Source: Isurus oxyrinchus (taxonomy: Eukaryota). Taken from it: a stretch of DNA of 64,000 bases. The stretch is from positions 11,532,001 through 11,596,000 of the forward strand of contig JANJGN010000034.1 of NCBI GenBank assembly GCA_026770705.1, given 5' to 3'. The position numbers and the translations under genes were made by a program. Under the pieces are notes generated by a model. The model ran no database searches. It was not told the origin of the DNA and saw nothing but the letters and a program-made list of their open reading frames with translations. This document shows, in pieces, positions 2,665 to 27,758 of this stretch. Numbering within the stretch: the first letter of the stretch is position 1; the number at the start of each line of letters is the position of its first letter.

Positions 2665-2668
2665 TCAT
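2665..2668 (-). CDS. Probable terminal coding exon (AG|A TGA = Arg-stop) followed by 3' UTR, copy A
   Basis: Acceptor tttttaaaacatcag followed by A-TGA fits the phase-2 donor of the previous exon; conserved in copy B (47881-47884). Confidence 0.45.
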
Positions 2669-4055
2669 CTGATGTTTTAAAAAGTACATTGTTCATCGTA
2701 ATGGCCACGGATCATGGAACCGAATTACTTACGACATGTTGAAATTTTCAGTAACACTTGATTTTTTTTAATGGACCCACAAACATAAATTGGCTGGTAC
2801 TGTAATGCCACCATTTGCCGGAAAATTCCGATGTGGATTGCACTTGTCCAAATAGTCTAAAGGACAGAATATTGCACCTAATCAATGTTTTCCAGAATAG
2901 GGCAGTCACGTGAATCATGAATTAATCGTTTTCTTTATAGCTTTTAGAAGAGCACTAGGCACTTCAATTGCACATTCCCTGAGTGCATTTTTGCATGTAA
3001 ATGTGTGAGTAAAGGCTATAATGTTAGATTGAGCGTGAAAATAAGCAATTATCTTTATTTAAACGCACAATCAGGAGGCTACTAGTTATTCAACTTGTTC
3101 ACACTTTCAAGGGATAATAAACACGTGTCTTTCCTTCAAAGTTTTACTGATTACAGACAACTGGGAAGGGAGCAGAGATTTCCCTGCTTCTCTCCGTCAC
3201 ACTGTCCGTAACAGCCTCCGCCCACATCCCACCAGCTCATGTCATGCTTCCCAAGGCGCGGGACAAATTGAAGCTAACTTCACCCAGATCTTTGGTGCTC
3301 ATTACGTGGCATGGGCTTATCACTGGAATCAAGAGTGATCACGAATCTGGAGCATTAATACTGTTACCTTAAATCAGCTTTCTCAGTTTGTGCTTTGTTT
3401 GCATTTTGCAAGGGAGTCTTAAGTTTTTGGCCCAGAGCAACAACATTTTGCATAACTGGCCAAAGATAAACACTCAGTTCACAATATAATCAAACTACAG
3501 GTGTTATTCTCAACCGCACACCCCGAGTTCAACCTCCTCAGTGGCAAGTGTTTAAACTGCACTCACGAGATAGAGTTATTTGTGAGCCCACAGAGAAAAA
3601 AATTGCCATAAAATTATTATTATTTTGTTGTAAAGCCTGACTAGTTCAGTAATGTCCTTTGTGGCAAATAGCATTTCACACCATTCGCTCTATATCAAGC
3701 TATAAGTTTTGGCTACCACTGAATACTATGAGGACACCTGGAGATCACAATTGAACACTGCCTTGTCATGTGATATTCCTGCCTTGTGAAGAAATGAGGA
3801 GACATGACGCTGTGGATACTGAAAGGATGGCTCCCCTTTGAGGGAGAAAGTGGATCAATGAGACAGAGTTTTAAAATAATGGTCATAATCAGTGCAGCCA
3901 CGAACTTATTAAATAGTGGAGGAGATTTGAAGGAGCCGAATGGCTTTCTCAGGCTCTTGATTCGTCTGCACGTTTGTTCTTAAATGGAAAATCCTACATT
4001 CCGCTTGCTTTTTTAAAAGATGGTAGATGACGTGTGAAATGTTCTTTCAACATAC

Positions 4056-4099
4056 CTCATCAATTCACTGTAAACTGACCGATCGTGCACTTGTAATCC
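4056..4099 (-). CDS. Cytoplasmic exon 4, copy A (GLQVHDRSVYSELM-R), second half of ITAM
   Basis: Acceptor ttttaacag, donor AG|gtatgt; 44 nt, phase 0-2; completes YMGL-x7-YSEL. Confidence 0.82.
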
Positions 4100-4229
4100 C
4101 TGTTAAAATTAATAATATATTTGCTTTTTTAGTGAACAACAATAGAGTGCGTTAAAAGAGAACTGAGGTGAAATAAAGGATAAATAGTCAGTGAATGAGA
4201 TAAAAGAATGCACAAAATAATATCCTGAC

Positions 4230-4271
4230 CATATAAGTAGAGTCTTCCTCAAGTGGTTTTGTAGCTTGCTC
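4230..4271 (-). CDS. Cytoplasmic exon 3, copy A (EQATKPLEEDSTYM), first half of ITAM
   Basis: Acceptor catttttacag, donor gtcagg; 42 nt, phase 0-0. Confidence 0.8.
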
Positions 4272-4746
4272 CTGTAAAAATGCAATTTGAAAAACGAAAT
4301 ACAGGCAGGTACACAAGATTTCCATGTAATTACTTCATAATTTACAACGATTAGAATGTCATATATCCTACAATAAAAGTTATACCAATTTCCCTAAAAT
4401 AACTAGCCCCAAATTAAATTTCAAGGGTGAATGTTCATTACTAACACGTGGTGAAAGAGGAGCAACAGCGCACAGAATATTCATTTCACTCAGCACTCGG
4501 TTATCATGACTGTGGTAAAATTGAAAATTGACACCAATATCCCATGCTGCAACAGGAGCATTGTTTGATAATCTTATAAAAACAGGAACCAGTCCACTAA
4601 CCGAGTAAGGCAAAGAAACCGAAACCCCTACCCTAGTCTGACTTATTGCCGAATCGAGTTTACTCCGACTGCATGAACAATGACATTGTTATCCTCACTG
4701 GAATGAACTCGCCAATGTGACCATGTTTTAATACAATTATACCAAC

Positions 4747-4811
4747 CTTTTGCTTTCTTGGAATATTTTCGTAGGCCGATGCTGAATTCTCCCTTATTGC
4801 AGCAGGGCTGC
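4747..4811 (-). CDS. Cytoplasmic exon 2, copy A (GSPAAIRENSASAYENIPRKQK), tyrosine motif SAYENI
   Basis: Acceptor tttttcattctcacag, donor gttggt; 65 nt, phase 1-0; conserved in copy B. Confidence 0.75.
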
Positions 4812-5742
4812 CTGTGAGAATGAAAAACAGTTAATCACATCTCCACATATAGTCACAGAATCATACAATGACAGAGCACAATCGGAGGTCATTTAGCCCA
4901 CCATGCCAGTATCAGCTCTTTGAAGGTGAAATACAATTAATCCCATTCCTCAAACATTTTCGCACACCCTTGTAAGTAAGCTTCCTTAACGTGCATATCC
5001 AACGTCCTTGTCAAACTGATATTCAATATGATTCCAACAGATGTTCATGTTATGCAACCCGATCATAGCAATTCGCTGCCTAAATATAAATTTACGCCTC
5101 ACGCAGCTGTCTTTTTGGGAACTAGATTTAATTTTTACCACCTGTGGCTGCTTACAGTTTCTCCTAATTTCCTCTATCACGATATTTCGCGATTTTGAAC
5201 ACCTCTGTAAAATCTCCCATCAGCCTCCCTGCTTTAAGGAGAATAAGCCGAGCTACTCCCATTCCTCCACGGAGCTATTTCTGTAAATCTGCAGTACACA
5301 CTCCTCAAGACAGTAACATTAGTCCTGAATCATTGAACCATGTACATGCCATTAGAGTGAGAACGGTTGCTTCATGTTCTGAGGCATTGCAGCTTTTGTT
5401 TCTTAGTTTTCTCTTTCTGTTTACTGGGGTGGACTCCGTTCGTGCTAATTTAATGATTTCTTGAGTTGTAGGGTCAATTTTACGAACTAAGGGTACACTT
5501 GGAACAGCCGTAATCAAGGAATGAAAATTGGTGGGAATCTAGTTCTACGTTTTTCAATATAACGCAGAAGAGATATAAATTCGGCTGCTGGTTCGCCATT
5601 ATCTATTCTACATTAGAGAGATGGGCGGAATTGTCCTAGGTATTTCATCATGTGGGTGTTCCTGAAGCTGACAGATTCACACTTTGAGCACCTAAGTAGC
5701 AGAAAACACAATGGTTAGTTCCAGGCAAAACCGTTGTCTCAC

Positions 5743-5807
5743 CGTCAGCTCTGTATGTGTACACAAAGCTATTCGGTTTTGAACTTTCACGAGGAATGTA
5801 CAACTCA
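5743..5807 (-). CDS. Cytoplasmic exon 1, copy A (ELYIPRESSKPNSFVYTYRAD); acceptor altered
   Basis: 65 nt, phase 2-1, the phase needed to join the TM exon to the next exon; donor G|gtgaga intact; acceptor is ttttagag versus ttttgcag in copy B. Confidence 0.6.
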
Positions 5808-6828
5808 CTCTAAAATGAAGCTTTCGTATGAAAATAGATACAGAAGCATATATTCGATGTTCTCAGTGTCAACGTATTTTCAGTCAGACATAATTTGCAC
5901 GAACGATTGCTTCTTTTCACCATTCACAAGTTAGGGAACCCTGTATTAAACAGTATATTGAGCGATATCCATGCTGATCCGAACATTTTTTTAAAATAGC
6001 GTTTAGCTGTTAGGCAATTGTGCGTAAAAGTGCTCAACAAGAACTAGTTTATCTACTTTGATGTGCAAACGTAAAGATTCATAAGTCTGCCCGATGTATG
6101 CTTGTTTGAATGAAGTTCAAGTCATAAAGCACTATTGACCCCTGCAACCATACATTCAACATGGAACTGCTAAAGTATTTCACTTACTATTTTCTGTTGG
6201 ACTAATGTTCGTAGCATTTTGCCCTTGCGTTGGTTCTTGCATCCTTAAGAAATGTAGTGCAACATAATAAAATAAACATTTTCAGGACGATATTATATTG
6301 CAATCATGATCTGCAACAGAAATCCTATTTCTTAATGTCTTATTATTAGTGGAAAATGTCTTCCTAACTGGAAGGAACAAATTTCATTCATGCTGGGCAA
6401 CATCGACATTATTTTATTCTTTTATGGGACCTGGGCGTCGCTAGCTGAGCCAGCATTTTTTATTGCCTATCCCTGATTGCCCTTGAGAAGACGGTGGTGA
6501 GCCGTCTTCCTGTGCCACTTCTGTCCATATGGCGTAGAAGCACCTAAAACAGTTTGATTAGTTGGAAGATGCAAAACTAAGTAACTGCATCAGCAACAGT
6601 AGTGGAGTGATATCATACCAAAGTGGGGAACTAACAGTAGGAAATTTTTGTCAATCAGAAAGAAAAACGATTATTATTGACTGTGTAAACATGCCTTATA
6701 AGTATATAGACTTGGATAGAGATATACACATATTTTGAAACAACCTTTCGCGCATCTACTTTGATTCAATTCATCAGGCTACAGACAAACTACTAAAGGT
6801 GCAGATAACATTTACATAGACTATTTAC

Positions 6829-6952
6829 CAGCATGCTTTCTTTTTGATCAGCCACGCGCTTATCCCGCCGATCATTCCCAGAATAAGTAGAACAGCAATC
6901 ACGATGCCTGCTTTGTGACCACTGCCTAATTCAGTGGTGGAGGAATGTTGTT
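6829..6952 (-). CDS. Stalk+transmembrane exon, copy A (EQHSSTTELGSGHKAGIVIAVLLILGMIGGISAWLIKKKAC)
   Basis: Acceptor attttcag, donor gtaaat; 124 nt, phase 1-2; hydrophobic stretch followed by KKK stop-transfer. Confidence 0.88.
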
Positions 6953-7689
6953 CTGAAAATGCATTAAGAACAGATATTGAAATTAATATCAAATGCCGGA
7001 ATCAATTAAACTCCTGTAGCAATGGGCCGGTATTTAAACACATTTTGCCGTAGCGCTTGATTGTTGCTAAATTTCAACAATGCAAGAATAAAAATGGCCA
7101 TGACAGAGGTCTCTCGAGCCAATGTGACACGTCATTTAAATACAAGCCTCTGCAACTGCAAGGGCAACCAGGTAATTGAGTCTCTACGCTCTTGATCCCA
7201 AAATATTTTAAAAATTTCTCTCTACAGCTTGTAATGGGCCAATCAAGTGCTGAGCATCAATGAATGCAATCCCGACTGTTGGCCGTGTTGTCTTCCAATT
7301 TTTCAGGAAGCATTTCGTTTGATTCCCAAAATATTAATTACTGCCCTCAACTGAAGCCTACATTTCACATCTTGTCAACTTCCATTTTCTTGTGTCTTGA
7401 AATCAGGTGGATTTCCCTTGGCAATCCCCTCCTGTTTCTCATCTACCTGATACATCAGTGACAACATGCCAAAATATATAGCTAGATTTTATGGGCCGCA
7501 GTGGTCCTCAGACCCAGGAGCGAATAAATCAGGGACCAGCCCAGCCGCACTGCTGGCCCCTGCATGGAATTTCCTATGCCGAGCAGACAGATTGTGAGAC
7601 AGTGCAGTGTTGGGGTGAGAGAGAGACTGCAGGGGACAAGCCAGTGTCGGGAGAGGAACAGGGAGACGGAAGACCTGCCGGACCATCCA

Positions 7690-8130
7690 GCGCGCTATAA
7701 GGTTGTCCATATCTGCAATCTTGAAAGCAGGGTGTTAGACATTTGCCCATCGTCCAAATGGATGCAGAACAGGCCTCATCAAATCTAATCCGCAGGGAAA
7801 TGTTCACTGTGTATCGGATAAAGTCTCAATGGGCCAAGCGCCGCCACTTTAGGACCAGGAACGTGCACGTTCTACCTCAAATTACCCAAGACAGGCAACA
7901 TTTCTCAAAACTTTGACCACCCGGAAAAGCAAGCCGTTTCCCACTGCTACCATGCAGTGTCTCCGTGAGTGGTACTTTCCACTAACAGGATGCTCCCTCA
8001 GCCCAAAAAGAATGCTCTGCCTATCACACAACTGAGCACCGCAATGCATCAGTTTCAGTGCCGTTGTGATGCCATGTGCGTAGGCCGTATATCCCAGTGA
8101 TTGGCTGATCGAATCAAGCAGCGTGTTATA
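7690..8130 (+). mobile_element. Penelope-like element remnant (RT C-terminus + GIY-YIG)
   Basis: Translates to ..YLKLP..GNISQNF..KQAVSHCYHAV..STNRMLP..FQCRCDAMCVGRISQ*LADRIKQ; same family as the 31.2-31.6 kb element. Confidence 0.75.
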
Positions 8131-10329
8131 TTGGTTGTTCATAAGAGTGTTTTAAACGTTAAAAACAAAGGTAAAAGTACAGCTGAGGGAACAGATACTG
8201 GTATCTTGAAGCAGCATAAGCTAACATGGCCAAACTGAAACCTAAATATAATTTTGATATGCGCAGTACGTCTTTAATCTGGAAATCTGCAAAAGCAACG
8301 CTTTTTATTCCGACGATTCACTTGGCAACAACTCACGTTGCACATCCTCTTGTGTGCTGAGTTTCTCTGGGCCACTGACTAAATCCAATTGACCCTGTCC
8401 TCCAAAATGAGAGCAGCACTAACACAGAACAACTGAACCCACAAATAAGAAGGTGTATGGCGATAAAGTGGGATTAGTGTCGCAGAATTGAGTTCCCACA
8501 GCTATATACATTCGTACCGCAATGAGTGGTTCTCCCTCTTTAGTGTACTGGAGATGGACAGTGTATAGGCATGCATTTGATGTTTTAGACTGCAGCCCTG
8601 TATCTTCGAAATGCTGAGTCAAGCACAGCGGTCTGCTTATTGAAACCACACCCTAATTGCACCAAGCAAAGCAAGGGGTAAAACAGCCCAGTAATAATTA
8701 TTTTTGTATGTATATTTGGTCACTCAAAGACCAAACGTAAGATTTTTTCCCACAAGAAAATCAGCGCTTCTAATTTGAGAATTATTTGTCGAAGCATGTC
8801 AGAAATAGTTTTTTTAAAAATGGCATTGGTGTATGAAATCAGGAAATCATTGCATGAGCAACATTTCTTTGTATTTATGCTTCGCAGTCTTCAAACTGAG
8901 CCTGTTACTGCATAAATAACAGATGTTTATGCAATTCAATAATAAAATGTCAGAGCCTCTCCATGTACTTGGAACCCGATTACCGAGTCTCTGCTCATGC
9001 TTACAAACTTCACCAGTTCACCTCTTCGCAAAGTTCATATTCAAGTTAATATTAATGATGCCACATGCTTTCGGGAAAAAGAAAATCTAAGTTTAGCGAA
9101 GTTCTGGAGTTTCGGCAGCCATAGCACAATTTAGATAAATTCACAAGTAAACATCAGAATTGTGAAATTGAACCTGGGAGGGACGCAAACCAGGTAATAT
9201 TATATATATTGCCAGTTACAAGCCTCACACTAAATTCAGGTCCATTTACCTATATGCAAATCATTATTGAACGTGGTGAATAACAAGACAGAAATGCAAC
9301 ACCGCCCAGCATGTATCTTTGTCCAGTCTAATATCCCTCGATAATTATTGGCGCACTAACGTTTTAGGAAAAGTCAATGTCTACATGTTAAATATCCGAA
9401 ATATGTGTGCATGTTAAGAATTGTGTTTTAGCTTGTTACAGTCTATATCTATTCTGGTTGTGGTTGACTTGCAGTAACATAACACAAGTTTGAACCATCC
9501 CTGCAAATTCAGTTATGCTTTGTAATAATAAACTTGCAAATACCAGTCAGCATGAATAGAGAAAAGAGATAATCCTGCATGATCAATCTGGATGAAGCTA
9601 CTTGTGAAATACATTGTGAAAGGGCAATGCAGAGCGTTTCCTCGAACTGTAAGAAAGATTTGAGAAAAGTTCCAGAGAGAGGCAGAAGAGTTAATTACAA
9701 GCATCGGGGCTATGGGGCATGGGTTACCAAAAGAATTAAACAGGCTGCAACGTCCAACAATGCACGCTGACATTTTTTGAAACATGCAAGAAAGAAGACC
9801 ATTCGGCCCATCGTGCCTTGCAGACTAATTGAACTTTTCATCCAAATTGCCTCACAACCTTGATCCTGCTCAAGGTGACCTTACAATGTATATTCAATTC
9901 CTTTACAGGAAAATAATGTTGAATTTGTTTTCATCACACTAAGACAGAACACTCCAGACTTCTTCAATTTTCTGCAAAGAAAATGATTCTCATCTCCCTT
10001 AGCTCTTTCACCAATTATCCTAATTCTGCATTGTCTAGTTGCCTACTATCCTACCAGTTTCCCCTCATTCATTCTATCAAGCCCGGCATAATTTTGTAAC
10101 CTCTATTTTACCTCATTCACAGGAAATCCGAAATTCTTTTGAGTGTGCACACCACTGAAGTTACTCATCCAATATATCATTCTGTTAGATGCCCCCTCCT
10201 GCCTCCCAAAAGATCAGCATACTGCGCAACGTGTGGTGCAGTGAAAGGGCATATAAATGTCAAGTGTAATGTACTGAATGTAGCAAGACAAAGGTAAATG
10301 GATGAACATGCCCTGCAAAGTATGTTGCT

Positions 10330-10940
10330 GCAAATAGCTTAGCATCGAATTAGCGTAGTGAATGCAATAAAGTTGAATTTTTGCAAGAAGAACACGACAG
10401 TAGGTACAAAAATCAAGGGTAACATTCTAAAGGAGTTTCAGGAGCAGAAAGACCTGAGGTATATGTATGCATAAGTCATTGAATATGACAGGACCAGTTA
10501 AGTGAGTGGTTAGTTAACATACCATATCCAAGGCTTCATTAATTACGGCATTGAGTTATGTTAAACTTTTATAGTACACTGGATCTGCCTCAGCCACAGT
10601 ATTGCATTCAATTTCAATGCACAACACTTACGGAAAGACCTGAAGACATCAGAGTGTGTGCAGATATGTTTCATGCAAAGGTTGCAGTGACAAGAAACTT
10701 CAATTATCTTGAAAGTTTGAACTGGTTAGGACTTACAGGGAGAATAGAAGCTGAGAGCTGATTTGATAGAGGGAGAAAAGTCATGAGGCACTGAAAAGAG
10801 TAGACAGTGAAAAATGCTCCCATTAGTGGAAGGATTGAGGATGAAAGAAACATCGAAGACATGAGGAAAAACATTTTCAAGCAGCTAGCGGTTGAGATCT
10901 GGAATGCATGACCAGACATTAGGCGGAGGGAGGTTCAATC
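10330..10940 (+). mobile_element. CR1 LINE 3' fragment (duplicate near 55560-56175)
   Basis: Degenerate CR1 ORF2 C-terminus (LNFYSTLDLPQPQYCIQF..., like LYKSLVRPHLEYCVQF). Confidence 0.7.
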
Positions 10941-10944
10941 GAGC

Positions 10945-11170
10945 CATGTGGTAACAACATTGAAATTGTATTTCAGAAGCCCAGGTGAACTATATGAGGT
11001 AGCGAGTTCAAATTCCACCGTGGCAGCCAGAGAAATTTTAATTCAACAAATAAATTTGTAATTGAAATCTAGGGTCAGTCATGGTGACATTGAAAGCATC
11101 ATCAATTGTCTTAAAAACCATTTGCTTCACTCATTTTTATTAGGGAAGGTAATCTGCCACCCTGCCCTAG
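10945..11170 (+). mobile_element. tRNA-derived SINE 5' part (duplicate near 56180-56405)
   Basis: B-box gagttcaaattc; body matches the SINE at 20248-20640. Confidence 0.6.
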
Positions 11171-12120
11171 CTAACCGGCCCACGTTTACTCAGTGTATCC
11201 GTTCTACCATGAAAGCCAGTCCAGCAAGCATCCAGTTCACTCAAAGATCTGTGGCGTTTGCAGGTGTGTTAAGATATACGAGTCATGAAAGCTTCCTGGG
11301 TATCTAGCACAAACAGGTAGGGTCTGCCTTCTGTGATCACGAATAAGCTGGGCGTTCAGAAACTGAAATCCTTTCCAATTGATGAATCTCACTGGCGGCT
11401 GACAGGGAACTCACACGGCTATATGTGTGCAGTAGATGTCGCCCTGCACTTGTGCGAAACCACATATCATTCTGAATACAACAGATCTTGCAGCCTGGCT
11501 TTCGCAACAATTGTGGAACATATTCAAAAAGGTATCCTTCACCTGCCTTACACATTTGTGTGTCGCCAATTGTAATATTTCCCACATGACCCTTTGGAGC
11601 CCTCGAATTATCTGCTGGCAAAAAAAGTGAAGCGAAGCTGTTACCTTCAAAGCCAGCTGCATGGGATGCCCTCCAAATCCTTGCAGCATCAGTTGTTCAC
11701 AGAGAAGGTGGCAAAAGTGAGCTACCAGGTTCGTGGACAACCGAAGGCGACTGCAGCATTGTCATCTCTACATCCCCGTATATCTGCAGAGATTTCTGTA
11801 TACCAGTGGTGGGCCACTGGTGTTCAATGAATTACCCTCTCTTTGGGAGCACCTTGGATTCTTCGGACACCGCTGCTTCTTGTAGCTCATGTCGCTGCAC
11901 ACTCTGGGCCTGTACCAAACGCCAATGGGCCCTTCTTCTCCTCATTGCATTACAGCTATAAACAAGGCCGGTTGCCTTCATCCGGCATTCTGCACTCTTA
12001 ATTGTCTCTGTCACTGAATGCATTTCAGAATTTAGTGAAACTTTTCCTTCACAAGTTTCCTTCCACCTCTGGGCCAGGAGGCCAATGCAAAGACTTTGGC
12101 CTGAATTCCCTCTGGGCACG
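11170..12120 (-). mobile_element. PIF/Harbinger transposase (HARBI1-like DDE) remnant
   Basis: GFGGHPMQLALKVTASLHFF...GFAQVQGDIYCTHIAV, then FINWKGFQFLNAQLIRDH...ARYPGSFHDSYIL, matching Harbinger motifs G.IDCTHV, NRKGFHSLN and PGS.HD; frameshifted. Confidence 0.85.
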
Positions 12121-12228
12121 CATCTTAAGTCCTCCCCTTGAAAGCGTCAAACATCCTGGAGGACCACAGGTGGCCGATCCTGCCCTTCAGACATGACTGT
12201 GCATGACTACGACCATGTGCGAGAACCC

Positions 12229-13060
12229 TGTCATGAAGAGGTATTAATGTCTATAGTGTCACTGGAAAATATTTTAAAATTGCAATTGTAGTGCGATCTG
12301 CATCTACATGTGTGCCTATGCGTGTGTCTACGTGTGTCCTAACTTGGTTAATGCCAGCTAGTCTGAGTGTTTTGATGCATGGTAGCTCAAGATGTTAATT
12401 GTTTCAATAGGTGAAAGGCCATTTTCGATTTGCATTTGTTGAATAAACCATTCAAACGAATGGGTAAAATCTTGCACCCAGATGGGAGATGCCAAGCAAT
12501 GCGTTTGTATTATTAATAATATTGATGGAATGAAAGGATTATCGTTTAGAGAGGTAAAATTAAAAACCTAGCAACACAATAAAAACTCTGCATTCAAAGC
12601 CGATGCTAGGTATAAACAGAAAGAAGTTTGTATCTATAAGTCAGAGGCATTTAAGATCTAACCAGCCTGTAAGCCAACAACTGTGTCTGCAAAGGAGGTA
12701 GATTGAAAGGATCATCACTTGGAATTCGTAAGATCAAATGTGCTTTACCTGATGTCTGTTTGAAGTCTCTGCATTATTAGTGCCTTGATGAAGATTTACT
12801 TGGAAGTGATTAATTTTGGATTTGTGTATAAGTTATTGTGAGAGTAATTTGTACACACTTATATGTGCTTAATCTGTTGTTAACTTAATAAACGTTTAAT
12901 TTAGTTTTATACAAAAAACCTCTTTCGACCTGGTGGTTTTATTCCTGATTGCAGAGCTGCATTTCAAACACACGAATTAGAAACATAGGTCATCACCGTT
13001 GTTCAAGTTTCCTTATGGGATTTAACCAACTCAGCCTTTACCAACTGCCGTGTCAAAACA
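12229..13060 (+). mobile_element. Solo LTR with 5-bp TSD (AACCC)
   Basis: TGTCATGA...TCAAAACA termini; aaccc at 12224-12228 and 13061-13065; internal TATA-like and AATAAA motifs. Confidence 0.85.
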
Positions 13061-14639: not shown

Positions 14640-15626
14640 GAGACGACCACAGGATCTAGTGATGTTGCCCTGCATTCACAATGCCGAGAGGTTGAAGCTG
14701 GCCAGGAGGCCATGTTTGGACAATGTGTAAGAAGTCTCCAAAAAGTGACCCTGAGGAGGCAGTGACAGCATGTGGCAAGGATTGTGAATGCCCAAAGCTT
14801 CTCAGCACAGACCTGGCAGCAGTGCCGATAAGGATTTAATGACCTCATTCGGGCAAGTTGGGCAAATGGATTAGCACGCCCTGTCGTGCAGCCACGACAA
14901 CTGACACCACTCATTGACAGCACGTCCTGATATTCAGGGGTCATTTCTAACATCCTTACATCGACATCTCAACCAAACACACCTCCCAGCCATACTAGCT
15001 ACCCACATGGTAGACACGGCCACCATTTAATTCCAGCGATTCAGTTACTGCACACATCGCACAAACACATACATAATGATGTCCTGCCCTCTCTCCTGCA
15101 GGAGAATACACCCACAACAGGTGGGAAAGCCAGTGAACTAGAAGAAGACCATTCCAAATGCAGTCCCTCAGTGCTAAGGGGGAGACTTACATTCGGAATG
15201 TGGGAAGCATTGCTACTGAATCAGTGACATTTGGCGCAGTGTATGCCATCCGAGATGATGGTAAGCTGTAGCCTTGTGCGCTTTGCCCACTAACTTCCTA
15301 CTCCTACCCTGAAAGGTGACATGAAATGAAAACTTGCAAATTTTGTTACCATGGACAACACAGCCTCTTTTCCCTTATCCCTACTAACCGGCCCCAATAC
15401 TTTTGGTTATCCAAAAATGGTCAGCTGCTCAGCCTCTTCACAGAGAATAAGCAGGCAAGAGGAGGAAGCTCGCTTTGTAGAAGAAGCACAGTCACTGAAC
15501 CTAACGGTCGCAGCCACCAGCCCGGATATTTGCACAATTGCATAACTTAAAGGCTAGTTTCAGAATCAGAATCTGCATGTGCTAAATCACTAGGCACGAG
15601 TGGGCTGCAGCCAGGACAAGGAATAG
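14640..15626 (+). mobile_element. Harbinger Myb/SANT-like (NAIF1/MSANTD-type) second gene remnant, intron-containing
   Basis: RRQ*QHVARIVNAQSFSAQTWQQCR*GFNDLIR resembles trihelix W..VA..VNA....RTW.QCRKKFNDL; residual exon 15102-15260 with cag/gtaag sites. Confidence 0.7.
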
Positions 15627-17820
15627 GTGAGATCCTGTGCCCTGTCATGACGCCCATGACACCTCCAGTGCCCATTCGTAACCCCATGACCCCTCATATC
15701 CACCAGGCTCCACATGCACTGTGCATAACCATTCATCCAGTATCCACTATGTGCAGAGCTCATGAGACACATGATGCCAAACGAAAGACTTTCAAATGCA
15801 CTCCAAAACATTGCATCTCTTACAAGAACAGAAAATATCAACCAAACGCGCATCCATTCATAATCCAGTGTTAAAACTCCAGTGTTAATGACGAAAAGAA
15901 ATCTCTTAAGTGGTCATTAAGTTGTGAAATTAAACAAACACCCATTAAAAAAAAACGCATTAAAGAAACTGAAACCAATGGCATGCACATAAAACCGTCA
16001 GTCCCCTTCACAGCTATGTCAACAGGTCCCTTGATGAGCTCAGTGGTTTCTGAAACTCAGCCAAGTATTCATAATGCAGTCAGCTGCAAAAACAGACTAT
16101 TACATCTGAAAACAATTTTCACTTTTGTTGTAAAAGGAACAGATGGAAAGGTTTTGTTTTCTCAAAATTTCAGTTTCGACCTGGAACAAATGGTCAGTTT
16201 TTTCCAATCTTCAGATCACTAACACCGGCTCCCTACTCACATTTTTACATGTTTTTGAACATATTCCGCCATGAAAATATACTCTAATGCATCTCAATAC
16301 GTAACTAGTTCTGGTCAATGTAATTGTCAAATTATCTTTTAACGTCAGATATTTCTGATCAATTCTTGTATTAAAATCATAATTAAAGCTATACAAAAGC
16401 CATGAACACACACCTACACGGGTACACTGTCTTTGAAAGCATATATTATCTTACACCATCTAAACATGGTTAAACCTATATGTCAAAACGCTCAGGGTTC
16501 CAGAGTAGTATTTACCCCATGATTGCCAAACGCTCTGCGGAGCCATGAATGGCATCTCATTGGAAAGGTTGGCCCAAATGCATCAACATTGTACCGGGCT
16601 TTCAAAAGTCCACCCCCCACAATGGAACTAGCATGGTTGCGAGTACAAGGTGCAGGGTCGCTATCCCACGACAAAGCTGCTGACAAAGGGAATGGGGGGG
16701 TATCTTAGAATCTGGCCCCACCCGCCATTTTTATAGACCTTCTGGCTCGGTACCACGGCACAAAAATCCAGCTCCATGAGTGTGAATCTGCGTTTAAAAC
16801 CTTGCGATAAGCCCTACTGGACAAAATAATCCGCGTTGTGAAATGTTGTTCAGGGAAGCCTCAAGTTACAAGATAAATTCAATAAACTGTACAAAAGGTT
16901 TGACAATTAATCATGGGGCCTGGTACACTATGTAACACCAGAATTGGTTGATGCTGTGTATGGATTTGGGTAATGTTGTTTGCAGCATTGAACCCAGCCT
17001 ATGTGAAACTACCACCCTACTGCGGTCTGACACTATTCTCCTGATTTACACAGTACTTTCCAAATATGGACCCACAACAAATTTGAGGTCTGTCACTCCA
17101 CTTCTACTGCAATTATAGTATTAGTCGTCCATTCAAATAAAAAACGTGCCTCCACTATTTACAGGAGACCACACTGTGAGCAACAAATGCAGTAGACTAA
17201 ATTTAAAGATGTGTAAGTGAATCGCTGTCTCCCCTGGAATTCATAATTGGGTCCTTGGAAGGTGAAGAGGGGGAGATAAAGAGGCAGGCGTTAGCCCTTC
17301 TCTAATTCCATGCAAAGGGGATGAGATGTTGGGCGCGTTGGAAGACTGGACCAGGACGTAAAGGAGGGAAATGTTCCTATGGAATGCTGACAGGGGAGGT
17401 GATGGATTATTAAAAAGAAGCTTGGGATTTGGGAATATAATTAGGATGAACGTTTTCTGCTAGTATGAAATGTTTTAAAATGCAACATGAAATAAAATGA
17501 CAAATAGATTTCACCATTAATGTGTCTCCCATTCACAGATATCAAAGTGGAAGTCTTCATTTGGAAATATACATGGAAGAAGGCCATGGAAAACAGTTCA
17601 AGGGTTAAAACAATTTAATAGTTTGATACTTCATAGCATAAAATTAAAGGTTATTTGTGAGCGCCACAAGTGCAATGTTACCCCCAATTATTTCAGCAAA
17701 ACTAACAGGACCAAAGAGCTGCACGTTCTTTCTATTCATACAATTAACTACTAAATAACTTGACCTTTGCATGGGTGGAATATAAGTTAAATAAATAAGA
17801 TTCAGAAATGTGTTACTTAC

Positions 17821-18083
17821 CTATTAGAACTTTATGTTTAGTGAGGTGCTGTAACTTTTTCTTAAACTGTTAAAGACCTGACAGGTATATGTTCCAGCAC
17901 CATTCAAAGTAATGCTAGAAATGATAAGTTTTTGCCCTTTTTGCTGCAGAGGGACATTGCTGATAAACTATTCCAATTCTGCAGGTGGGTTTGAGTCCAT
18001 AGAACATGAGAAATTAATGCTTTTTCCAACAAGGTAAGCAGACAAATCAAGGTCTATGGTTATGTTAGGAAGATCCGGTCCAT
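17821..18083 (-). pseudogene. Second IgC2 exon, disabled, copy A (YGPDLPNI...INFSCSMDSNPPAELE*F...GQKLIISSITLNGAGTYTCQVFN)
   Basis: Acceptor tttag, donor gtaagt; conserved Trp codon is TAG (17968-17970); 263 nt because of a 1-nt deletion near the 3' end relative to copy B. Confidence 0.9.
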
Positions 18084-18264
18084 CTAAACTAAGTCCACAA
18101 ATATATTGTAATAAATATCTGCTAAAATGAAAAGCAGCAGTGGACTATACGTTCATAGCAATCACCAACATCACAGAAACTATACACCCCTGTGTTTTAC
18201 GCGAACTTAAGTCAATAAGTTGTGCCATTTTCCCCAGTGCTCAATGGCGGGATCCCAATATCAG

Positions 18265-20215
18265 TTTTTTTATTAATTCGTTCATGGGACGTTTCTGTCA
18301 CTGCTAGGCCAGCATTTATTGCCCATCCCTAATTGCTCTTGATAAGGTGTTAGTGAGCTGCCTTCTTCAGCTGCTGCAATCCACGTGGAGGAGGTGCACC
18401 CACACTGTAATTGAGAGGGTTGGGGAGGGGGTCGGAGGTTGGTGGGTTGAGGTTTTCAAGATTTTTTTCCCAGCAACAGTCGAATTTCCAAGTCAAGGTG
18501 GTGTGTGGCTTTAGGTTGGGGGATGGATGGGTGGTGGCGATGGAGGACGTCCTGGTGATTGTCTTTCTACTTGTCTGCTGCACTTCTACTCCAAGATAGT
18601 AGGGGTCCTGGGTTTGGGATGTGCTGTCTAAGAAGAATTGGTCAGCTCCTGCAGTGCATCTTGCAGATGGTACACACTGCTGCTACTGTGCGTCGGTGGT
18701 GGAGGGAGTAAATGTCTATGGATGGGGTGCCAATCAAGCTCGCTGCTTTTTCCTGGATGGTCTCACACTTCTTGAGTGTTGTGGCAGCTGCGCTCATCCA
18801 GGCAAGAGGGGAGTATTCCATTACACTCCTGACTTGTGCCTTGTAGATGGTGGACAGCCTTTGGGGAGTCAGCAGTTGAGTTACTTGTAACAGAATTCCC
18901 AGCCTCTGACCTGCTCTTGTCACCATAGTATTTATATGGCTAATCCAGTTCAGTTTATGGTCAATGCTAATCCCGAGGTTGTTGGCAGTGTGGCATTCAG
19001 CGATGGTAATGACATTCAATGTCATGAGGCAGTGACTAGATTTTCCCTTTTCGGAGAGGTTCCTGGCAATTCTGTGGCATGGATGATACTTACTACTTGC
19101 CAGCCCAAACCTGGATATTGTCATGGTCTTGCTGCTTTTAGACATGGACTGCTTCAGCGTTCGAGGGGTCATGAATGGTGCTGAATTTTGACAATCATCA
19201 GCGAACATCCTCCTTCTGACCTTATGATGGGACGATAGTCATTTATGAAGAAACTGATAATGGATTGGGGGAGGGCATTATCCCGAATAACCCATGCAGC
19301 GATGTACTGGAACTGATATGATTGACATCCAACAACCAGCGGCAACTTCCTTTGTGCTAGGTATGACCCCCACCAACCGAGAGCTATCCTCCTCTTTCCC
19401 ATTGATTTTAGTTTTGCAAAGGCTCCTTGAAGCCACATTCGGTCGAATACAGCCTTGATGGCAAGGGCAGTCACTCACACCTCCCCTCTGGAGTTCAGAT
19501 CTTCTGTTAATGTTTGAACCAAGGCTGTACTGGTTCAAACCATTACAGGAGCTGAGCGATTTTCGTGGAACCCAAACTTGGCATTAGTGAGCTGGTTATT
19601 TCGAAGCCAGTGTTGCTTAAGTGTTGCTTGATGGCACTGCTGGTGATCCCCTACATCACTTTTCTGATTATAGAGAGAAGACTGTTGGGGCAGTAATTGG
19701 CCGCATTGGATTTCTCCTGCTTTTTGTGCAGCAAACGTACCTGCGCAATTTTCCACAATGGTTTGTAATGCCAGTGCTGTAGATGCCAATGCTGCAGCTG
19801 TACTGAAACAGCATGGCTAAGGTCGCAGCAATTTGAGAAGCATAAGTCGTCAGTACTATTGCCGGAATATTGTCAGGGCCCAAAGCCTTTGCAGTAGCCA
19901 GTGCCTTGATCTGTTCGTTGATATCTCATGTAGTGAACCGAATTGTCTGAAGACTGGCATCTATAATGCTTTGGAACTCCAGGGGAGGCCGAGATAGATC
20001 ATCTTGTCCCTTCTGGCTGGAGATTGTTCCAAATGCTTCAGCTTTATATTTTGCACTCACGTGTTGGTCTTCCCCATCATTGCAGATGCGGAGTTTTGTG
20101 GAGCCTCCTCCTTCAATGAATAGTTTAGTTGTCCATCACCATTTAGAATTCGATGTGGCAGCACTGCAGAGCTTTGATCTGATCAGTTGGTTATAGAATT
20201 CTTTAGCTCTGCCAG
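18265..20215 (-). mobile_element. CR1/L2-group LINE, 5'-truncated, decayed RT
   Basis: ORF fragments GPDNIPAIVL.., ALAIKAVFDRMW.., MFADD.., IYKAQVRSVMEYSPLAWM; 3' UTR with A-rich tail. Confidence 0.92.
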
Positions 20216-20640: not shown

Positions 20641-21406
20641 AATGCCAAAGTCTCCTGCTTCTGATGATTTCTAATCACCTTTGTTGAGTACATATGTACA
20701 TTTCGAGTTCAGGAATGGTGAGGATATGATTCCTGCCATGAGCTGCAATTTTAAAATGTGAGATCTGTACAAACCTGCTGGGCACATACAGCAGTATGGT
20801 TGCATCAAAATGTATTGTTCTGAGAAAAAAATCTATTAAATTTTGATTTTGACAATTATTATTCTTTCCCTCAAACCAGTCTGAATTTCATCTTTTATCG
20901 GATTTAAAAATAAACTAATTAACTTCATTGAAAATATCCATAATGAAACCCGAATGTCCACTGAAGCAACACACAACTGTTCAAATACTTCGTCCATGAA
21001 ACTCGTATGTTTTATATCATCTGGTATTCCTGCTGTAGAATTAAGATTGAGCCGTTATGTCTAATGGCTTCTGGGATCATACCACAAAAGCTTCCTCACA
21101 TCCAAAAGTTAATTCGTTTAAGATTAGTCTGTAAACAAAGAAGTTCAATACTATCAATTATCAATGAACATATATTTTATTACGAGTTCTGTCTCAAAAA
21201 GCATCTAAGTATTCCGAGTATACTTACTTAAATAAATAATCTCTGAGGCAATTTTCCTTGGCAATGTAAAAGTGATGAGCTATTTGTTTACATGTTTCAA
21301 TAAATAATCATTATATGCAAACAATCATTTATTTCCCTTTTCCAAATCTGAAATGTAGCAGGTATGGTGATAAGTTACAAAACTAATGATCTGTTGGAGC
21401 ACCTGC

Positions 21407-21682
21407 AGCTAAAATTTGGGTTCTATAGGTCACTTGTCATTCTGCTAAAGGAGTTGAATGCGTAGCACTTGAATCGTCCATCAGAACTAAACACTGCAGA
21501 TATAGTGAGAGTTCCATTATCACCGCTTAGATCAAAGCTGCTGTCGGTAATAATATCAGGATTATCCTCAAGCCACTGATATGAAACTGCAGTGCCTGAT
21601 GCGATGCATGTCAGAGTCACGATCTCATTGTATTCAACTGAGTTGGTGACATTGTTGATTATATTAGGCTTTTAAATAGGTT
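21407..21682 (-). pseudogene. First IgC2 exon, disabled (EPI*KPNIINNVTNSVEYNEIVTLTC...YQW...NGTLTIS...FKCYAFN...SDL*NPNFS)
   Basis: Acceptor tttgacag; 276 nt, phase 1-1; C-W-C Ig pattern; in-frame TAA at 21672-21674 and TAG at 21423-21425; donor is gcaggt rather than gt. Confidence 0.88.
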
Positions 21683-23400: not shown

Positions 23401-23414
23401 GGAGCCTGTGATCC

Positions 23415-26500: not shown

Positions 26501-26555
26501 GCGCGCAGAGCAAGCGATTCATGAACAATCCTCATCCCCAGGGCGGCCAAAAGCT

Positions 26556-26745
26556 TAAAAGCAAATTACTGCGGGCTCTGGAAACCTGAATCAAAAACAA
26601 AAAATGCTGGAAATGCTCACCAGGTCTAACAGCATCTGTGGAGAGAAAGACAGAGTTGACATTGCGAGTCCCTATGACACTTCTTCAAAGCTCTGGTTGG
26701 TGGAATACCTGCTGAATTTTTGCGGAATTTTCTGTTATTGTGGCT
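26556..26745 (-). mobile_element. Penelope-derived short repeat
   Basis: aaatgctggaaatgctcaccaggtctaacagcatctgtggagagaaa family; also at 39005 and 40630. Confidence 0.7.
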
Positions 26746-27026
26746 CTTAGTTTAACTGTTCCTTATTTTGACAGTTCGTCCTGTGCCTCTTTAGGAATGT
26801 TTCTCGAGCCTAATTTCTAGAACATCCTGTAAGACACTGACCGTCCGGCTCTAATCTTGTATCGCACCCAGTCCCCTTTGTTTCTTAAGTGCCCATACAA
26901 CCAGAGGTAGGTATCATCACCTGCGCAGCCATCTCTTTCCCTACCCCCGCAGCAACTCCCACTCCTGTGGCGACCAGCAACTCTCGCCCACCCCCACCCA
27001 CCCAAACCCACCACCGCCGCCCCACG

Positions 27027-27045
27027 CCCCCCCCCCCCCCCCCCC
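27027..27045. repeat. poly-C (19)
   Basis: Homopolymer. Confidence 0.95.
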
Positions 27046-27235
27046 TCCAAGCCCATGGTGGAAGTCTCCTTTATTGAATTCAAGAAGAGTTTGTCACCCT
27101 TCCATTCCCAAAATATCAGGATTTCTTGCAAATCGAGTCCAGGGCAGACAGAGAATGCGCATGTTGCTGCTAATTACGTCATCACGCTTTTTGGCGCCAT
27201 CGCGCGCGCGCTGTGAGACAAGACGGGCCACTTAC

Positions 27236-27553
27236 CAAGGACGTGCAGAGCGATGGTTGCTGTTGCTTCACTGCCATTAACTGGAGTCATGCTAACAATG
27301 TAATCTCCACTGTCCGAAGCTGTCACTGACTTCAGCAGCAATGATCCGTTAGCGAGGAAGATCTCAGCCCGTGTTGTGTACTCATTATGGAAATCAACAG
27401 CTGTCTTGATCCACCGACCTATAGTTTCCCTCTTGAACTCCCAGTTTCCAGACCTCACCGCGGCTGACGGCTTCACTGAAAATAATGCGTTTCCTCCGAC
27501 GGTCACATTAATCCGACTGTTTTCTGTCAGGATGGTGAAACCCTGGGGCTCAG
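27236..27553 (-). CDS. IgV (CEACAM N-type, cysteine-less) exon, intact: AEPQGFTILTENSRINVTVGGNALFSV...W...RAEIFLANGSLLLKSVTASDSGDYIVSM...ATIALHVL
   Basis: Acceptor tttctttctttag, donor G|gtaagt, 318 nt, phase 1-1, no stops; NGSLLL..DSGDY motif; no B/F-strand cysteines; lies within ORF 27174..27758. Confidence 0.92.
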
Positions 27554-27706
27554 CTAAAGAAAGAAAATCAGCATTAAGGACGAAGCAACCAGAAACTCGA
27601 CAAAACATCGACTTCTCGAACACCATACCCTGATTTTCTCTGACAATCTCTTGCTGTCTTGTTTCTTCAGTCACTAAAAGAACTGATATAAGAACGTGAT
27701 CCTCAC

Positions 27707-27758
27707 CCACAGATAGCAATAAGCAAACAGCGACCGCAGTAAGTGTCAGTCTCCTCAT
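27707..27758 (-). CDS. Leader/signal peptide exon, copy A (MRRLTLTAVAVCLLLSV-G)
   Basis: ATG at 27758; 52-nt exon; hydrophobic peptide; phase-1 donor G|gtgagg. Confidence 0.9.

What the first reader, a model, noticed from the sequence alone, without database searches (positions are those of the whole stretch)
2665..27758. Candidate CEACAM3-like activating receptor (L-V-TM-ITAM) made by killing and skipping both IgC2 exons
Seen: the leader, IgV, TM and ITAM exons are open, while both IgC2 exons carry stops, a frameshift or a GC donor. The V exon ends in phase 1 and the TM exon starts in phase 1, so a V-to-TM splice is in frame (..HVL-E-QHSSTT..). Hand count between copies: about 15 differences in 340 nt over the TM and cytoplasmic exons, versus about 27 substitutions plus 2 indels in 264 nt in the dead C2 exon. 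Caveat: the intron beside the TM exon is also well conserved. Established: human CEACAM3 is a single-N-domain ITAM-like decoy phagocytic receptor for bacterial adhesins. Inference: a convergent short activating receptor in a cartilaginous fish, which annotation would probably call a pseudogene.
Basis: partly seen in the sequence, partly recalled or inferred. Interest (0 to 1): 0.85.

Follow-up and report, generated by a model that had tools for sequence, protein, structure and literature searches.

The report
Shark single-domain CEACAM-like ITAM receptor gene
This is a shark gene for a small immune receptor with one outer immunoglobulin domain and an activating tail, which skips two decayed exons; the same kind of gene is already annotated in other sharks and was described in dogs.

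Summary
On the minus strand, the leader, V, TM and tail exons are open. Both IgC2 exons are dead.

Two corrections:
- The ITAM frame needs a 56-nt exon at 6243-6188.
- The coding region ends at 1478, not 2665.

Contigs guessed to be RNA, from four studies, show every TM-to-tail junction. One shows eight letters of the V exon's end joined to the TM exon. No contig is 99% like this copy, so expression of this copy is not shown.

The architecture is not new. RefSeq has an 83%-identical great white shark paralogue named "CEACAM4-like". I read the same L-V-TM-ITAM build in six further elasmobranchs. Dog CEACAM24/25 are single-N-domain ITAM-type receptors in a gene group with corrupted IgC exons (PMC2110893).

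The live exons diverge at half the local rate. Staying fully intact has P about 0.01 under neutrality, yet dN/dS is 0.92.

Verdict: a probably functional new member of a known kind. First readers noted similar modules elsewhere in this genome.

The parts
27707..27758 (-). Leader exon (ATG at 27758, 17 codons plus 1 base, phase-1 end)
   Evidence: Read. tblastn finds related leaders at 42952 and 29489.
27236..27553 (-). IgV-like (N-type) exon V1: 318 nt, phase 1-1, open, no cysteine. It is the only intact V exon in the window.
   Evidence: Sequence and translation. Pfam V-set E 1.6e-4, below the cut-off. Best PDB match is the CEACAM1 N domain. 83% identical to the V of P0014. Keeps 29 of 30 family-conserved columns. 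Its last 9 letters match the loose end plus the overlapping G at the TM acceptor in one contig.
21403..21682 (-). Dead IgC2 exon C2a (A-type): TAA at 21674-21672 and TAG at 21425-21423. Out of phase with the GT donor; in phase only with a GC donor after 21410.
   Evidence: Sequence. Pfam Ig_3 E 1.5e-9 on the open middle part. 60% identical over 87 residues to an A-type domain of P0036.
17821..18083 (-). Dead IgC2 exon C2b (B-type): TAG at the conserved Trp (17970-17968), TAA-TAG at the end, 263 nt (frameshift). AG acceptor and gtaagt donor are kept.
   Evidence: Copy B has the same TAG, so the exon died before the duplication.
6829..6952 (-). Transmembrane exon: 124 nt, starts in phase 1, ends with 2 bases of a split codon, no charged residue in the hydrophobic span.
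   Evidence: 39 of 40 whole codons match the same stretch of P0014 (my count on the alignment). RNA-type contigs cover it in 4 of 4 runs, and the junction to 6242 is seen in 3 of 4.
6188..6243 (-). Tail exon cyt0: 56 nt. Including it sets the ITAM frame; skipping it shifts the frame.
   Evidence: Predicted (acceptor cttaag, donor gtaagt). Matches P0014 residues 166-184. Joints 6828>6242 in X9, X8, X12. Skipping joint 6828>4810 in X13.
4747..4811 (-). Tail exon cytA: 65 nt, carries SAYENI, a tyrosine motif 21 residues before the ITAM.
   Evidence: Joint 4746>4270 in 4 of 4 runs.
4230..4271 (-). Tail exon cytB: 42 nt, holds the first ITAM tyrosine (ends ..STYM).
   Evidence: Joints.
4056..4099 (-). 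Tail exon cytC: 44 nt, holds the second ITAM half (GLQVHDRSVYSELM). With cytB it gives YxxL-x7-YxxL.
   Evidence: Joint 4229>4098 in X9 and X12.
1339..1484 (-). Last exon: two Arg codons, then TAA at 1480-1478, then 3' UTR reaching at least 1339.
   Evidence: Predicted. Joint 4056>1484 in X9 and X12, with contig pieces at 1339-1484. Sequence. P0014 ends the same way.
45202..64000 (-). Second copy of the 3' part of the gene. It runs to the window's end, so its V exon lies outside. Exons: C2b' 63188-62926, TM' 52614-52491, cyt0' 51641-51586, cytA' 50169-50105, cytB' 49638-49597, cytC' 49465-49422, last 46682-46676.
   Evidence: Self-alignment gives 87-91.5% identity in five blocks. MAFFT pair gives 8.7% substitutions. 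All exons are open and all AG/GT sites are kept.
42040..42952 (-). Dead leader-V cassette V2 (leader intact; V exon 5'-truncated, frameshifted and stopped), followed by a second broken V-like exon.
29201..29489 (-). Dead leader-V cassette V3. The leader matches P0014's in 15 of its first 16 residues. The V exon has a TAA after 9 codons and breaks off.

Best explanation
The stretch holds one member of a tandemly duplicated, birth-and-death family of shark CEACAM-like genes. Its mature mRNA most likely joins these exons: leader (27758-27707), V (27553-27236), TM (6952-6829), cyt0 (6243-6188), cytA (4811-4747), cytB (4271-4230), cytC (4099-4056), and a last exon starting at 1484. Two decayed IgC2 exons in the 20-kb V-TM intron (an A-type and a B-type) are passed over.

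The product is a type I membrane protein of about 235 residues. It has one disulfide-less IgV-like domain, an uncharged TM helix, and a tail carrying SAYENI plus a canonical ITAM split over two mini-exons.

By inference, ligand binding at the V domain leads to phosphorylation of the ITAM and to Syk-type activating or endocytic signalling, as for mammalian CEACAM3/4 and dog CEACAM25. Skipping the 56-nt exon shifts the frame and gives a short tail without the ITAM. That is the same switch as the 53-nt Cyt1 exon of mammalian CEACAMs.

Shown: exon integrity, the lesions in the C2 exons, the family's splice pattern, and slower change of the live exons.
Inferred: transcription of this particular copy, signalling, ligand, and cell type.
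For: 1. Open, in-phase exons with AG/GT sites, kept in both copies.
2. RefSeq XP_041032829.1 (P0014, Carcharodon carcharias, 'CEACAM4-like', 235 aa) has exactly this exon chain. It is 83% identical in V, and in the local alignments 84%, 68% and 93% identical in cyt0, cytA and cytB.
3. Contigs guessed to be RNA, from 4 runs of 4 studies, show canonical GT..AG joints at the predicted boundaries: TM>cyt0 in 3 of 4 runs, cytA>cytB in 4 of 4, cytB>cytC in 2 of 4, cytC>last exon in 2 of 4. Introns have no depth except at repeats.
4. X8 record 16 has an 8-letter loose end at the TM acceptor. With the overlapping G, it occurs once on the minus strand of the window, exactly at the V1 exon's 3' end, 27244-27236.
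5. Live exons show 14 mismatches in 338 nt between copies, against 29.7 +/- 6.5 in resampled non-exonic windows (P 0.004; local P 0.002). Dead C2b shows 27 in 263, which is typical of background (P 0.29).
6. In a neutral simulation at the background substitution and indel rates, all five exons stayed open, spliceable and unshifted in 1.1% of 20,000 trials.
7. V1 keeps 29 of 30 columns that are at least 85% conserved in 16 relatives.
8. The tail is conserved across elasmobranch orders.
9. No other Ig-like exon lies in the window, and the other three V-like exons are broken.
Against: 1. Between the two copies, dN/dS is 0.92 (10 nonsynonymous and 3 synonymous changes). This is indistinguishable from 1, and synonymous change is as low as nonsynonymous. 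The low exon divergence could therefore come from gene conversion or chance rather than from selection on the protein.
2. None of the 292 laid contigs is 99% or more like this stretch. 14 are 95-99% alike. The transcripts may come from paralogues, alleles or a close relative.
3. No sequencing run holds more than 23% of the sampled words, so none is shown to be the source animal.
4. The contig closest to this copy (X13 record 8: 0 of 106 and 2 of 65 other letters) is the cyt0-skipping form, which lacks the ITAM.
5. The V-TM junction rests on 8 loose letters in one contig. 19 loose ends were not shown, and X9's piece runs one letter further (to 6954), so its upstream exon may end differently.
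6. Both dead C2 exons keep usable AG and GT sites. Some transcripts could include them and be degraded.
7. Leader and V transcription were not examined.
Confidence: 0.65

Rival explanations
1. This copy is a young, silent pseudogene in a birth-and-death cluster. Its exons are still open only because too little time has passed. The transcripts seen come from paralogues such as the gene for P0014.
For: dN/dS is 0.92 between the copies. None of 292 contigs is 99% alike. Three neighbouring V-like exons and both C2 exons are dead. First-reader notes list many more modules nearby.
Against: Both copies kept five open exons and all their splice dinucleotides, with no indel, while C2b gained 27 substitutions and 2 indels over the same time. 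The neutral chance of that is about 0.011. Exon divergence is half the background (P 0.002-0.004). V1 keeps 29 of 30 conserved columns. X13 record 8 matches this copy better than copy B: 0 other letters in its 106 TM letters, a span where copy B differs from copy A at 2 places (my reading of the alignment).
Confidence: 0.2
2. The gene is transcribed, but the main product has no ITAM. Skipping the 56-nt exon gives a short-tailed form that does not signal. Alternatively, the C2 pseudo-exons are included and the mRNA goes to nonsense-mediated decay. In either case the locus acts as a regulator or sink rather than as an activating receptor.
For: The cyt0-skipping joint 6828>4810 is the form carried by the contig most like this copy (X13). 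The dead C2 exons keep AG and GT sites, and C2b has a perfect gtaagt donor. Mammalian CEACAMs use the same frame-shifting exon to make short tails (PMC2110893 section 8).
Against: Three of four runs carry the TM>cyt0 joint. The ITAM exons are as conserved as the TM exon, and the ITAM is conserved across elasmobranch orders.
Confidence: 0.1
3. V1 and the TM-ITAM module are parts of two different former genes, brought together by deletion or unequal crossing-over. The C2 relics then belong to the downstream gene, so nothing was 'killed and skipped' in place.
For: The V-TM intron is 20 kb. The upstream region holds orphan dead leader-V cassettes without constant parts. The CEACAM3 review proposes such a recombination as plausible for human CEACAM3 (PMC7026191, passages).
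Against: The order V, A-type C2, B-type C2, TM is that of an intact long shark CEACAM-like gene. The duplication runs on past C2b to the window's edge, so the unit may hold the whole gene. The resulting gene model is the same either way.
Confidence: 0.05

Closest known systems
[quoted passage not shown]
   Same: Identical exon chain: leader, V, TM, 19-residue cyt0, YENI exon, split ITAM, C-terminal Arg-Arg. Identity is 83% in V, and the TM-exon peptide matches at 39 of 40 whole codons (my count). The tail has the same motifs.
   Different: It is a paralogue, or a relative's gene, not this locus: 5 of 21 residues differ in cytA. Its leader resembles the dead cassette at 29489 more than V1's leader. 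Whether its intron holds the same dead C2 exons is therefore unknown.
Single-V ITAM models in other elasmobranchs that I read: Heptranchias perlo P0157, Mustelus asterias P0158, Stegostoma tigrinum P0159, Hemiscyllium ocellatum P0029, Mobula hypostoma P0026, Pristis pectinata P0046
   Same: 225-240 residues. One cysteine-free V domain, TM, a YEN-type motif (YENI in 4 of the 6; YENF in Mobula, YENM in Pristis) and Y-x-x-L-x7-Y-x-x-L.
   Different: 40-57% identical overall to P0014. These are annotation models, and I saw no transcript evidence for them. Other family members have 2-5 V domains, or V plus C2 domains.
Dog CEACAM24 and CEACAM25 (Kammerer et al. 2007, PMC2110893; sections 8 and passages of 6, 9, 10 read)
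   Same: Cloned cDNAs encode one N domain followed by a TM domain, with an ITAM in CEACAM25. [quoted passage not shown] Skipping the 53-nt Cyt1 exon shifts the frame.
   Different: A mammalian, independent expansion. There the exon is 53 nt and four tail exons encode the tail; here it is 56 nt and five tail exons. Expression in dog granulocytes, spleen and marrow was shown; here nothing is known of the tissue.
Human CEACAM3 and CEACAM4 (review PMC7026191; passages read)
   Same: A single IgV-like domain, TM, and an ITAM-like (CEACAM3) or consensus (CEACAM4) ITAM tail. CEACAM3 works as a phagocytic receptor paired with CEACAM1.
   Different: The review says a CEACAM3 orthologue has been detected only in Old World monkeys, apes and humans, so orthology is excluded. 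The review proposes recombination between a CEACAM1-like and a CEACAM4-like gene, not decay of exons in place. Bacterial ligands and granulocyte expression are untested here.
Stegostoma tigrinum pair: long 'CEACAM5-like' P0164/P0036 and short ITAM receptor P0159
   Same: The long form has V, eight alternating A/B C2 domains, TM, and long or short tails. The window's C2a and C2b match its adjacent A-type and B-type domains at 60% and 50%. The short receptor's leader plus V is 80% identical (97 of 122) to that of the long form. Both are recorded on a longest contig of the same length.
   Different: Another species. No long partner for V1 was found for the window's own species, because none lies in the window and no shark genome could be searched.

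Membership tests
CEACAM family (IgSF) | N-terminal IgV-like domain without the canonical intradomain disulfide | tested here: met
   The V1 translation has no cysteine. It keeps the Arg and the Asp-x-Gly-x-Tyr positions that are conserved in the family alignment. That these form the salt bridge of CEACAM N domains is recalled, not tested.
CEACAM family (IgSF) | V domain closest to CEACAM N domains rather than to other IgSF V domains | tested here: met
   PDB sequence search: the best three hits are CEACAM1 (E 5.5e-5 to 2.7e-4), then otk, JAML and CD2. A family profile gives five CEACAM1 chains at the top (1.4e-10 to 9e-9). The margin is modest. Pfam V-set scores below its cut-off.
CEACAM family (IgSF) | Alternating A-type and B-type IgC2 exons after the N exon, all in phase 1 | tested here: met
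   C2a aligns to an A-type domain and C2b to the next B-type domain of the Stegostoma 'CEACAM5-like' protein. Here both are pseudo-exons.
CEACAM family (IgSF) | Tail encoded by several mini-exons, the first one frame-shifting when skipped (53 nt in mammals) | tested here: met
   The exon is 56 nt, and 56 mod 3 = 2. Both the inclusion and the skipping joints are seen. The mammalian rule comes from PMC2110893 section 8.
CEACAM family (IgSF) | Location in the conserved CEACAM synteny block | not testable with these tools
   The window holds only family members, and no shark genome could be searched (closed).
ITAM-bearing activating receptors | Cytoplasmic Y-x-x-L/I, 6-8 residues, Y-x-x-L/I | tested here: met
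   cytB ends ..STYM and cytC reads GLQVHDRSVYSELM. Across the splice this gives YMGL, seven residues, YSEL. Copy B keeps it as YMGL ... YNEL.
ITAM-bearing activating receptors | Phosphorylation-dependent recruitment of Syk-family kinases and cell activation | not testable with these tools
   This needs an experiment.
CEACAM3-type decoy phagocytic receptor | Orthology to primate CEACAM3 | tested here: not met
   The review PMC7026191 (passages) reports CEACAM3 orthologues only in Old World monkeys, apes and humans. The nearest proteins found here are shark paralogues.
CEACAM3-type decoy phagocytic receptor | Paired long or inhibitory family member with a near-identical N domain in the same species | tested here: inconclusive
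   Seen in Stegostoma: 80% over leader plus V between P0159 and P0164. Not seen for V1, because no partner lies in the window and its species could not be searched.
CEACAM3-type decoy phagocytic receptor | Binds microbial adhesins and drives uptake in granulocytes | not testable with these tools
   This needs an experiment. The tissues of the RNA runs are coded.

The most novel reading that the evidence does not exclude
Sharks may run a CEACAM1/CEACAM3-style paired-receptor system. Long adhesion-type or inhibitory CEACAM-like proteins would be shadowed by short single-V ITAM receptors that copy their V domain, as in the Stegostoma pair. The short forms would be made again and again by letting the A/B IgC2 exons decay inside the intron. 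A frame-shifting mini-exon of about 55 nt that turns the signalling tail on or off would then have been kept from cartilaginous fish to mammals. That would place the decoy-receptor logic and the long/short tail switch at the base of jawed vertebrates.
Probability: 0.3. Interest if true: 0.55.

Novelty: new member of a known kind. Interest (0 to 1): 0.35.

Why it matters
If this copy is expressed, it adds a lamniform shark example to a rule known from dog and primates. In CEACAM clusters, short ITAM receptors arise from longer genes by loss of IgC domains, and a small frame-shifting exon switches the tail.

The papers I could search treat cartilaginous-fish CEACAMs only through a skate EST and general statements. 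A described shark cluster, with paired long and short forms, would therefore extend the paired-receptor story to the oldest jawed vertebrates.

For annotation, it is a reminder that stop-bearing Ig exons inside an intron do not make an IgSF gene a pseudogene.

The item itself is ordinary for this family and is already visible in RefSeq models of related sharks.

Tried and rejected
- **Direct TM>cytA>cytB reading.** It stops seven codons into cytB and has no ITAM. I rejected it as the main form once the 56-nt exon was found and seen in contigs. It is kept as an alternative isoform, because X13 shows it.
- **A 44-nt candidate exon around 6083 carrying TYESL.** Rejected by hand: it gives a TGA in the frame set by the TM exon (sequence).
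In the frame of the TGA at 2667-2665, a TAA lies three codons upstream (read by hand). The contigs join cytC to 1484 instead.
- **A working array of leader-V cassettes feeding one constant region** (note s1-900878). V2, the V-like exon behind it, and V3 are all broken.
- **Reverse-transcriptase-like ORFs in the big intron (18642-19883 and others).** 0 of 7 ORFs hit Pfam at E 0.01 or better. Their resemblance to LINE reverse transcriptase is only my impression.
- **Further Ig exons.** Local tblastn of the stored proteins of up to 1000 residues (163 were held) found islands only at the exons already listed, all on the minus strand.
- **Literature on shark CEACAMs.** Four searches: 'CEACAM + cartilaginous fish + ITAM' gave 5 papers; 'CEACAM + shark' gave 332, of which I scanned the 15 listed; 'CEACAM + IgC + pseudo exon' had no paper among the 10 listed with the phrase; 'CEACAM + elasmobranch' gave 3, none relevant. 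I found no description of a shark cluster. Supplements, which may hold cartilaginous-fish sequences (File S1 of PMC3628338; supplementary figures of PMC13278318), were not requested.
- **Whether this genome's own annotation has the model.** The search with P0014 returned 16 proteins, none marked as encoded by the window. This cannot tell a missing model from a genome that is absent from the collection.

Full report
**What is there**

The gene lies on the minus strand.

- The leader exon starts with ATG at 27758 and ends after 52 nt in phase 1.
- The V exon, 27553-27236, is 318 nt. It is open, in phase 1 at both ends, and followed by gtaagt.
- Its 105 whole codons contain no cysteine.
- Pfam sees a V-set domain at E 1.6e-4, below the family cut-off.
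- The best solved relatives are CEACAM1 N domains. The V exon alone gives E 5.5e-5. A profile of nine family members gives 1.4e-10 to 9e-9 for the five top chains, all CEACAM1.

**The two IgC2 exons are dead**

C2a, 21682-21403:
- It has TAA as its fourth codon and TAG near its 3' end.
- It is 280 nt with its GT donor, which is out of phase. It is in phase only if a GC after 21410 is used.

C2b, 18083-17821:
- It has TAG in place of the conserved tryptophan.
- It ends in TAA-TAG and is 263 nt, a frameshift.

Pfam still recognises Ig domains in the open pieces. Against the zebra shark 'CEACAM5-like' protein P0036 (V, eight alternating C2 domains, TM), C2a aligns to an A-type domain at 60% over 87 residues. 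C2b aligns to the very next B-type domain at 50%. The relics therefore stand in the order expected of a V-A-B-TM ancestor. Both keep AG and GT sites, and C2b has a perfect gtaagt donor.

**TM and tail**

- The TM exon, 6952-6829 (124 nt), starts in phase 1, so V-to-TM is in frame.
- It ends with two bases of a split codon.
- A scan for exons of length 2 mod 3 between them found 6243-6188: 56 nt, acceptor cttaag, donor gtaagt, and 2 differences from copy B. With it, the frame gives SAYENI in 4811-4747.
- The canonical ITAM is split between 4271-4230 (..STYM) and 4099-4056 (GLQVHDRSVYSELM).
- YENI lies 21 residues before the first ITAM tyrosine (my count on the exons). The Zimmermann and Kammerer 2026 preprint reports 17-21 residues for the upstream motif in reptile CEACAM ITAM tails (passages read).
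- The coding region ends in a further exon that starts at 1484: two Arg codons, then TAA at 1480-1478. It does not end at 2665.

**The duplication**

- Positions 1-18895 recur at 45202-64000, at 87-91.5% identity in five blocks. The match runs to the window's edge, so the unit may be larger.
- In a MAFFT pair, 8.7% of aligned sites differ and there are 88 gap events.
- Copy B's C2b has the same TAG at the tryptophan, so that exon was dead before the duplication. Each copy then gained its own 1-nt indel.
- The TM and tail exons of both copies are open, and all acceptors and donors are kept.

**Is the live part constrained?**

- The six live coding pieces show 14 mismatches in 338 nt.
- Sets of non-exonic windows of the same sizes give 29.7 +/- 6.5. 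P is 0.004 over the whole duplicate and 0.002 within 1000-8500.
- C2b, with 27 in 263, is ordinary background (P 0.29).
- I simulated neutral change at the background substitution spectrum and frameshifting-indel rate. All five exons stayed open, spliceable and unshifted in 1.1% of 20,000 trials.
- Against this, Nei-Gojobori counts give 10 nonsynonymous changes over 251 sites and 3 synonymous over 70, so dN/dS is 0.92. Synonymous change is as low as nonsynonymous.
- Selection on the protein is therefore not shown by this pair alone. Exon-limited gene conversion in a multigene family is an alternative.
- V1 keeps 29 of 30 columns that are at least 85% conserved among 16 relatives' V domains.

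**Relatives**

- The V exon searched against 1.84 billion representatives gave 243 proteins at E 0.001 or better. I read 22 sequences in all and looked up names for 20.
- It is leader, V, TM, a 19-residue cyt0, the YENI exon, the split ITAM and a C-terminal Arg-Arg: exactly the chain proposed here. It is 83% identical in V.
- The same single-V, TM, tyrosine-motif and ITAM build stands in RefSeq models of Heptranchias perlo, Mustelus asterias, Stegostoma tigrinum, Hemiscyllium ocellatum, Mobula hypostoma and Pristis pectinata. That is 7 of the 22 sequences read.
- A Callorhinchus model has one V and a TM but no canonical ITAM.
- Other members carry V-C2-TM-ITAM (Hypanus sabinus, P0155) or two to five V domains (Scyliorhinus torazame and canicula, Rhincodon, Pristiophorus).
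- The short architecture is thus old and widely annotated, not an oddity of this locus.
- In Stegostoma, the short receptor's leader plus V is 80% identical (97 of 122) to that of the long 'CEACAM5-like' protein. That protein has long and short tail isoforms, and both proteins are recorded on a longest contig of the same length. This is the pattern of paired receptors.

**Transcripts**

- No listed run holds more than 23% of the sampled words of 2600-7100, and none is on record as RNA.
- I laid four runs guessed to be RNA, from four studies, on 1100-7050 at 90% likeness.
- Depth sits on the predicted exons and on a repeat at 6274-6671. The introns are otherwise empty apart from three low-depth bins (3289-3487, 3886-4084 and 5080-5278).
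- Joints with GT..AG ends lie exactly at the predicted boundaries:

| Joint | Exons joined | Runs |
|---|---|---|
| 6828>6242 | TM>cyt0 | X9, X8, X12 |
| 6187>4810 | cyt0>cytA | X12 (shifted variants in X9 and X8) |
| 4746>4270 | cytA>cytB | all four |
| 4229>4098 | cytB>cytC | X9, X12 |
| 4056>1484 | cytC>last exon | X9, X12 |
| 6828>4810 | TM>cytA, skipping cyt0 | X13 |

- The last joint is the frame-shifted short-tail form.
- At the TM acceptor, X8 record 16 has eight loose letters. With the overlapping G, their reverse complement occurs once on the window's minus strand, at 27244-27236, the last nine letters of V1 before its donor. That is a V-to-TM junction, but only nine letters of it.
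- Two longer contigs with 98 and 120 letters upstream of the TM exon were among the 19 loose ends not shown.
- X9's piece runs to 6954, so its upstream exon may end differently.
- Of the 292 laid contigs, none is 99% or more alike. 14 are 95-99% alike, and the rest are mostly the repeat.
- The contig nearest to this copy (X13 record 8: 0 of 106 and 2 of 65 other letters) is the cyt0-skipping form.
- The splice pattern is therefore shown for the family, not for this copy.

**The neighbourhood**

- The other leader-V cassettes are broken.
- The one at 42952 has a 5'-truncated, frameshifted, stopped V exon, followed by a second broken V-like exon.
- The one at 29489 has a TAA after nine codons and breaks off.
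- A local tblastn of the stored proteins of up to 1000 residues finds no other Ig-like exon in the window.
- This is a birth-and-death cluster. V1 is the only usable V exon upstream of the TM exon at 6952.

**What is known**

- Kammerer et al. 2007 (PMC2110893; section 8 read whole, passages of sections 6, 9 and 10) cloned dog CEACAM24 and CEACAM25 cDNAs that encode one N domain followed by a TM domain, with an ITAM in CEACAM25.
- They also show that loss of the 53-nt Cyt1 exon shifts the frame.
- The CEACAM3 review (PMC7026191, passages) reports CEACAM3 orthologues only in Old World monkeys, apes and humans, and proposes recombination as its origin.
- Chang et al. 2013 and Pavlopoulou and Scorilas 2014 trace CEACAMs with ITAMs to cartilaginous fish on the basis of a little skate EST (passages).
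- My four searches found no description of a shark CEACAM cluster. Supplements were not opened.

**Verdict**

This is very probably a gene for a single-V ITAM receptor that passes over two dead IgC2 exons.
- It is one more member of a family already annotated in sharks and rays. It is made by a route already described in dog, and its tail looks inherited rather than convergent.
- A decoy function like that of CEACAM3 is a reasonable analogy, and the Stegostoma pair strengthens it. It is untested.
- I did not send any joined exon model to a search tool.

Noticed in passing
window 6274-6671 (core 6459-6509): An intronic repeat draws hundreds of contigs at 90-95% likeness, with summed depths in the thousands in three of four runs guessed to be RNA. 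It is probably an abundant transcribed interspersed repeat. Next to it, copy B has about 260 extra letters at copy-A position 6550.
   Followed up: partly
window 42040-42952 and 29201-29489: Two orphan leader-V cassettes keep intact leaders and promoter-proximal similarity to V1 (about 70% over 400-590 nt), but their V exons are broken. They look like relics of further gene copies without constant parts.
   Followed up: yes
window 18541-18818, 37187-37466, 63645-63923: A 280-nt element present three times at 77-78% identity. The copy-A/copy-B similarity runs through it. ORFs beside it (18642-19883, minus strand) look like reverse transcriptase to my eye but gave no Pfam hit.
   Followed up: partly
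window 27034-27056: A run of about 22 G on the minus strand lies in the intron just downstream of the V exon.
   Followed up: no
window 30730-30892 versus 31780-31937: An inverted repeat of about 160 nt at 72% identity, roughly 900 nt apart.
   Followed up: no
window 44626-44829: A 204-letter N run lies between the dead cassette V2 and the 3' flank of copy B. It was left as it is.
   Followed up: no
proteins P0159, P0164, P0036 (Stegostoma tigrinum): A short ITAM receptor and a long V plus eight-C2 'CEACAM5-like' protein share an 80%-identical leader plus V. Both are recorded on a longest contig of the same length. The long protein has a long tail with tyrosine motifs and a short-tail isoform. 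This is a shark paired-receptor candidate.
   Followed up: partly
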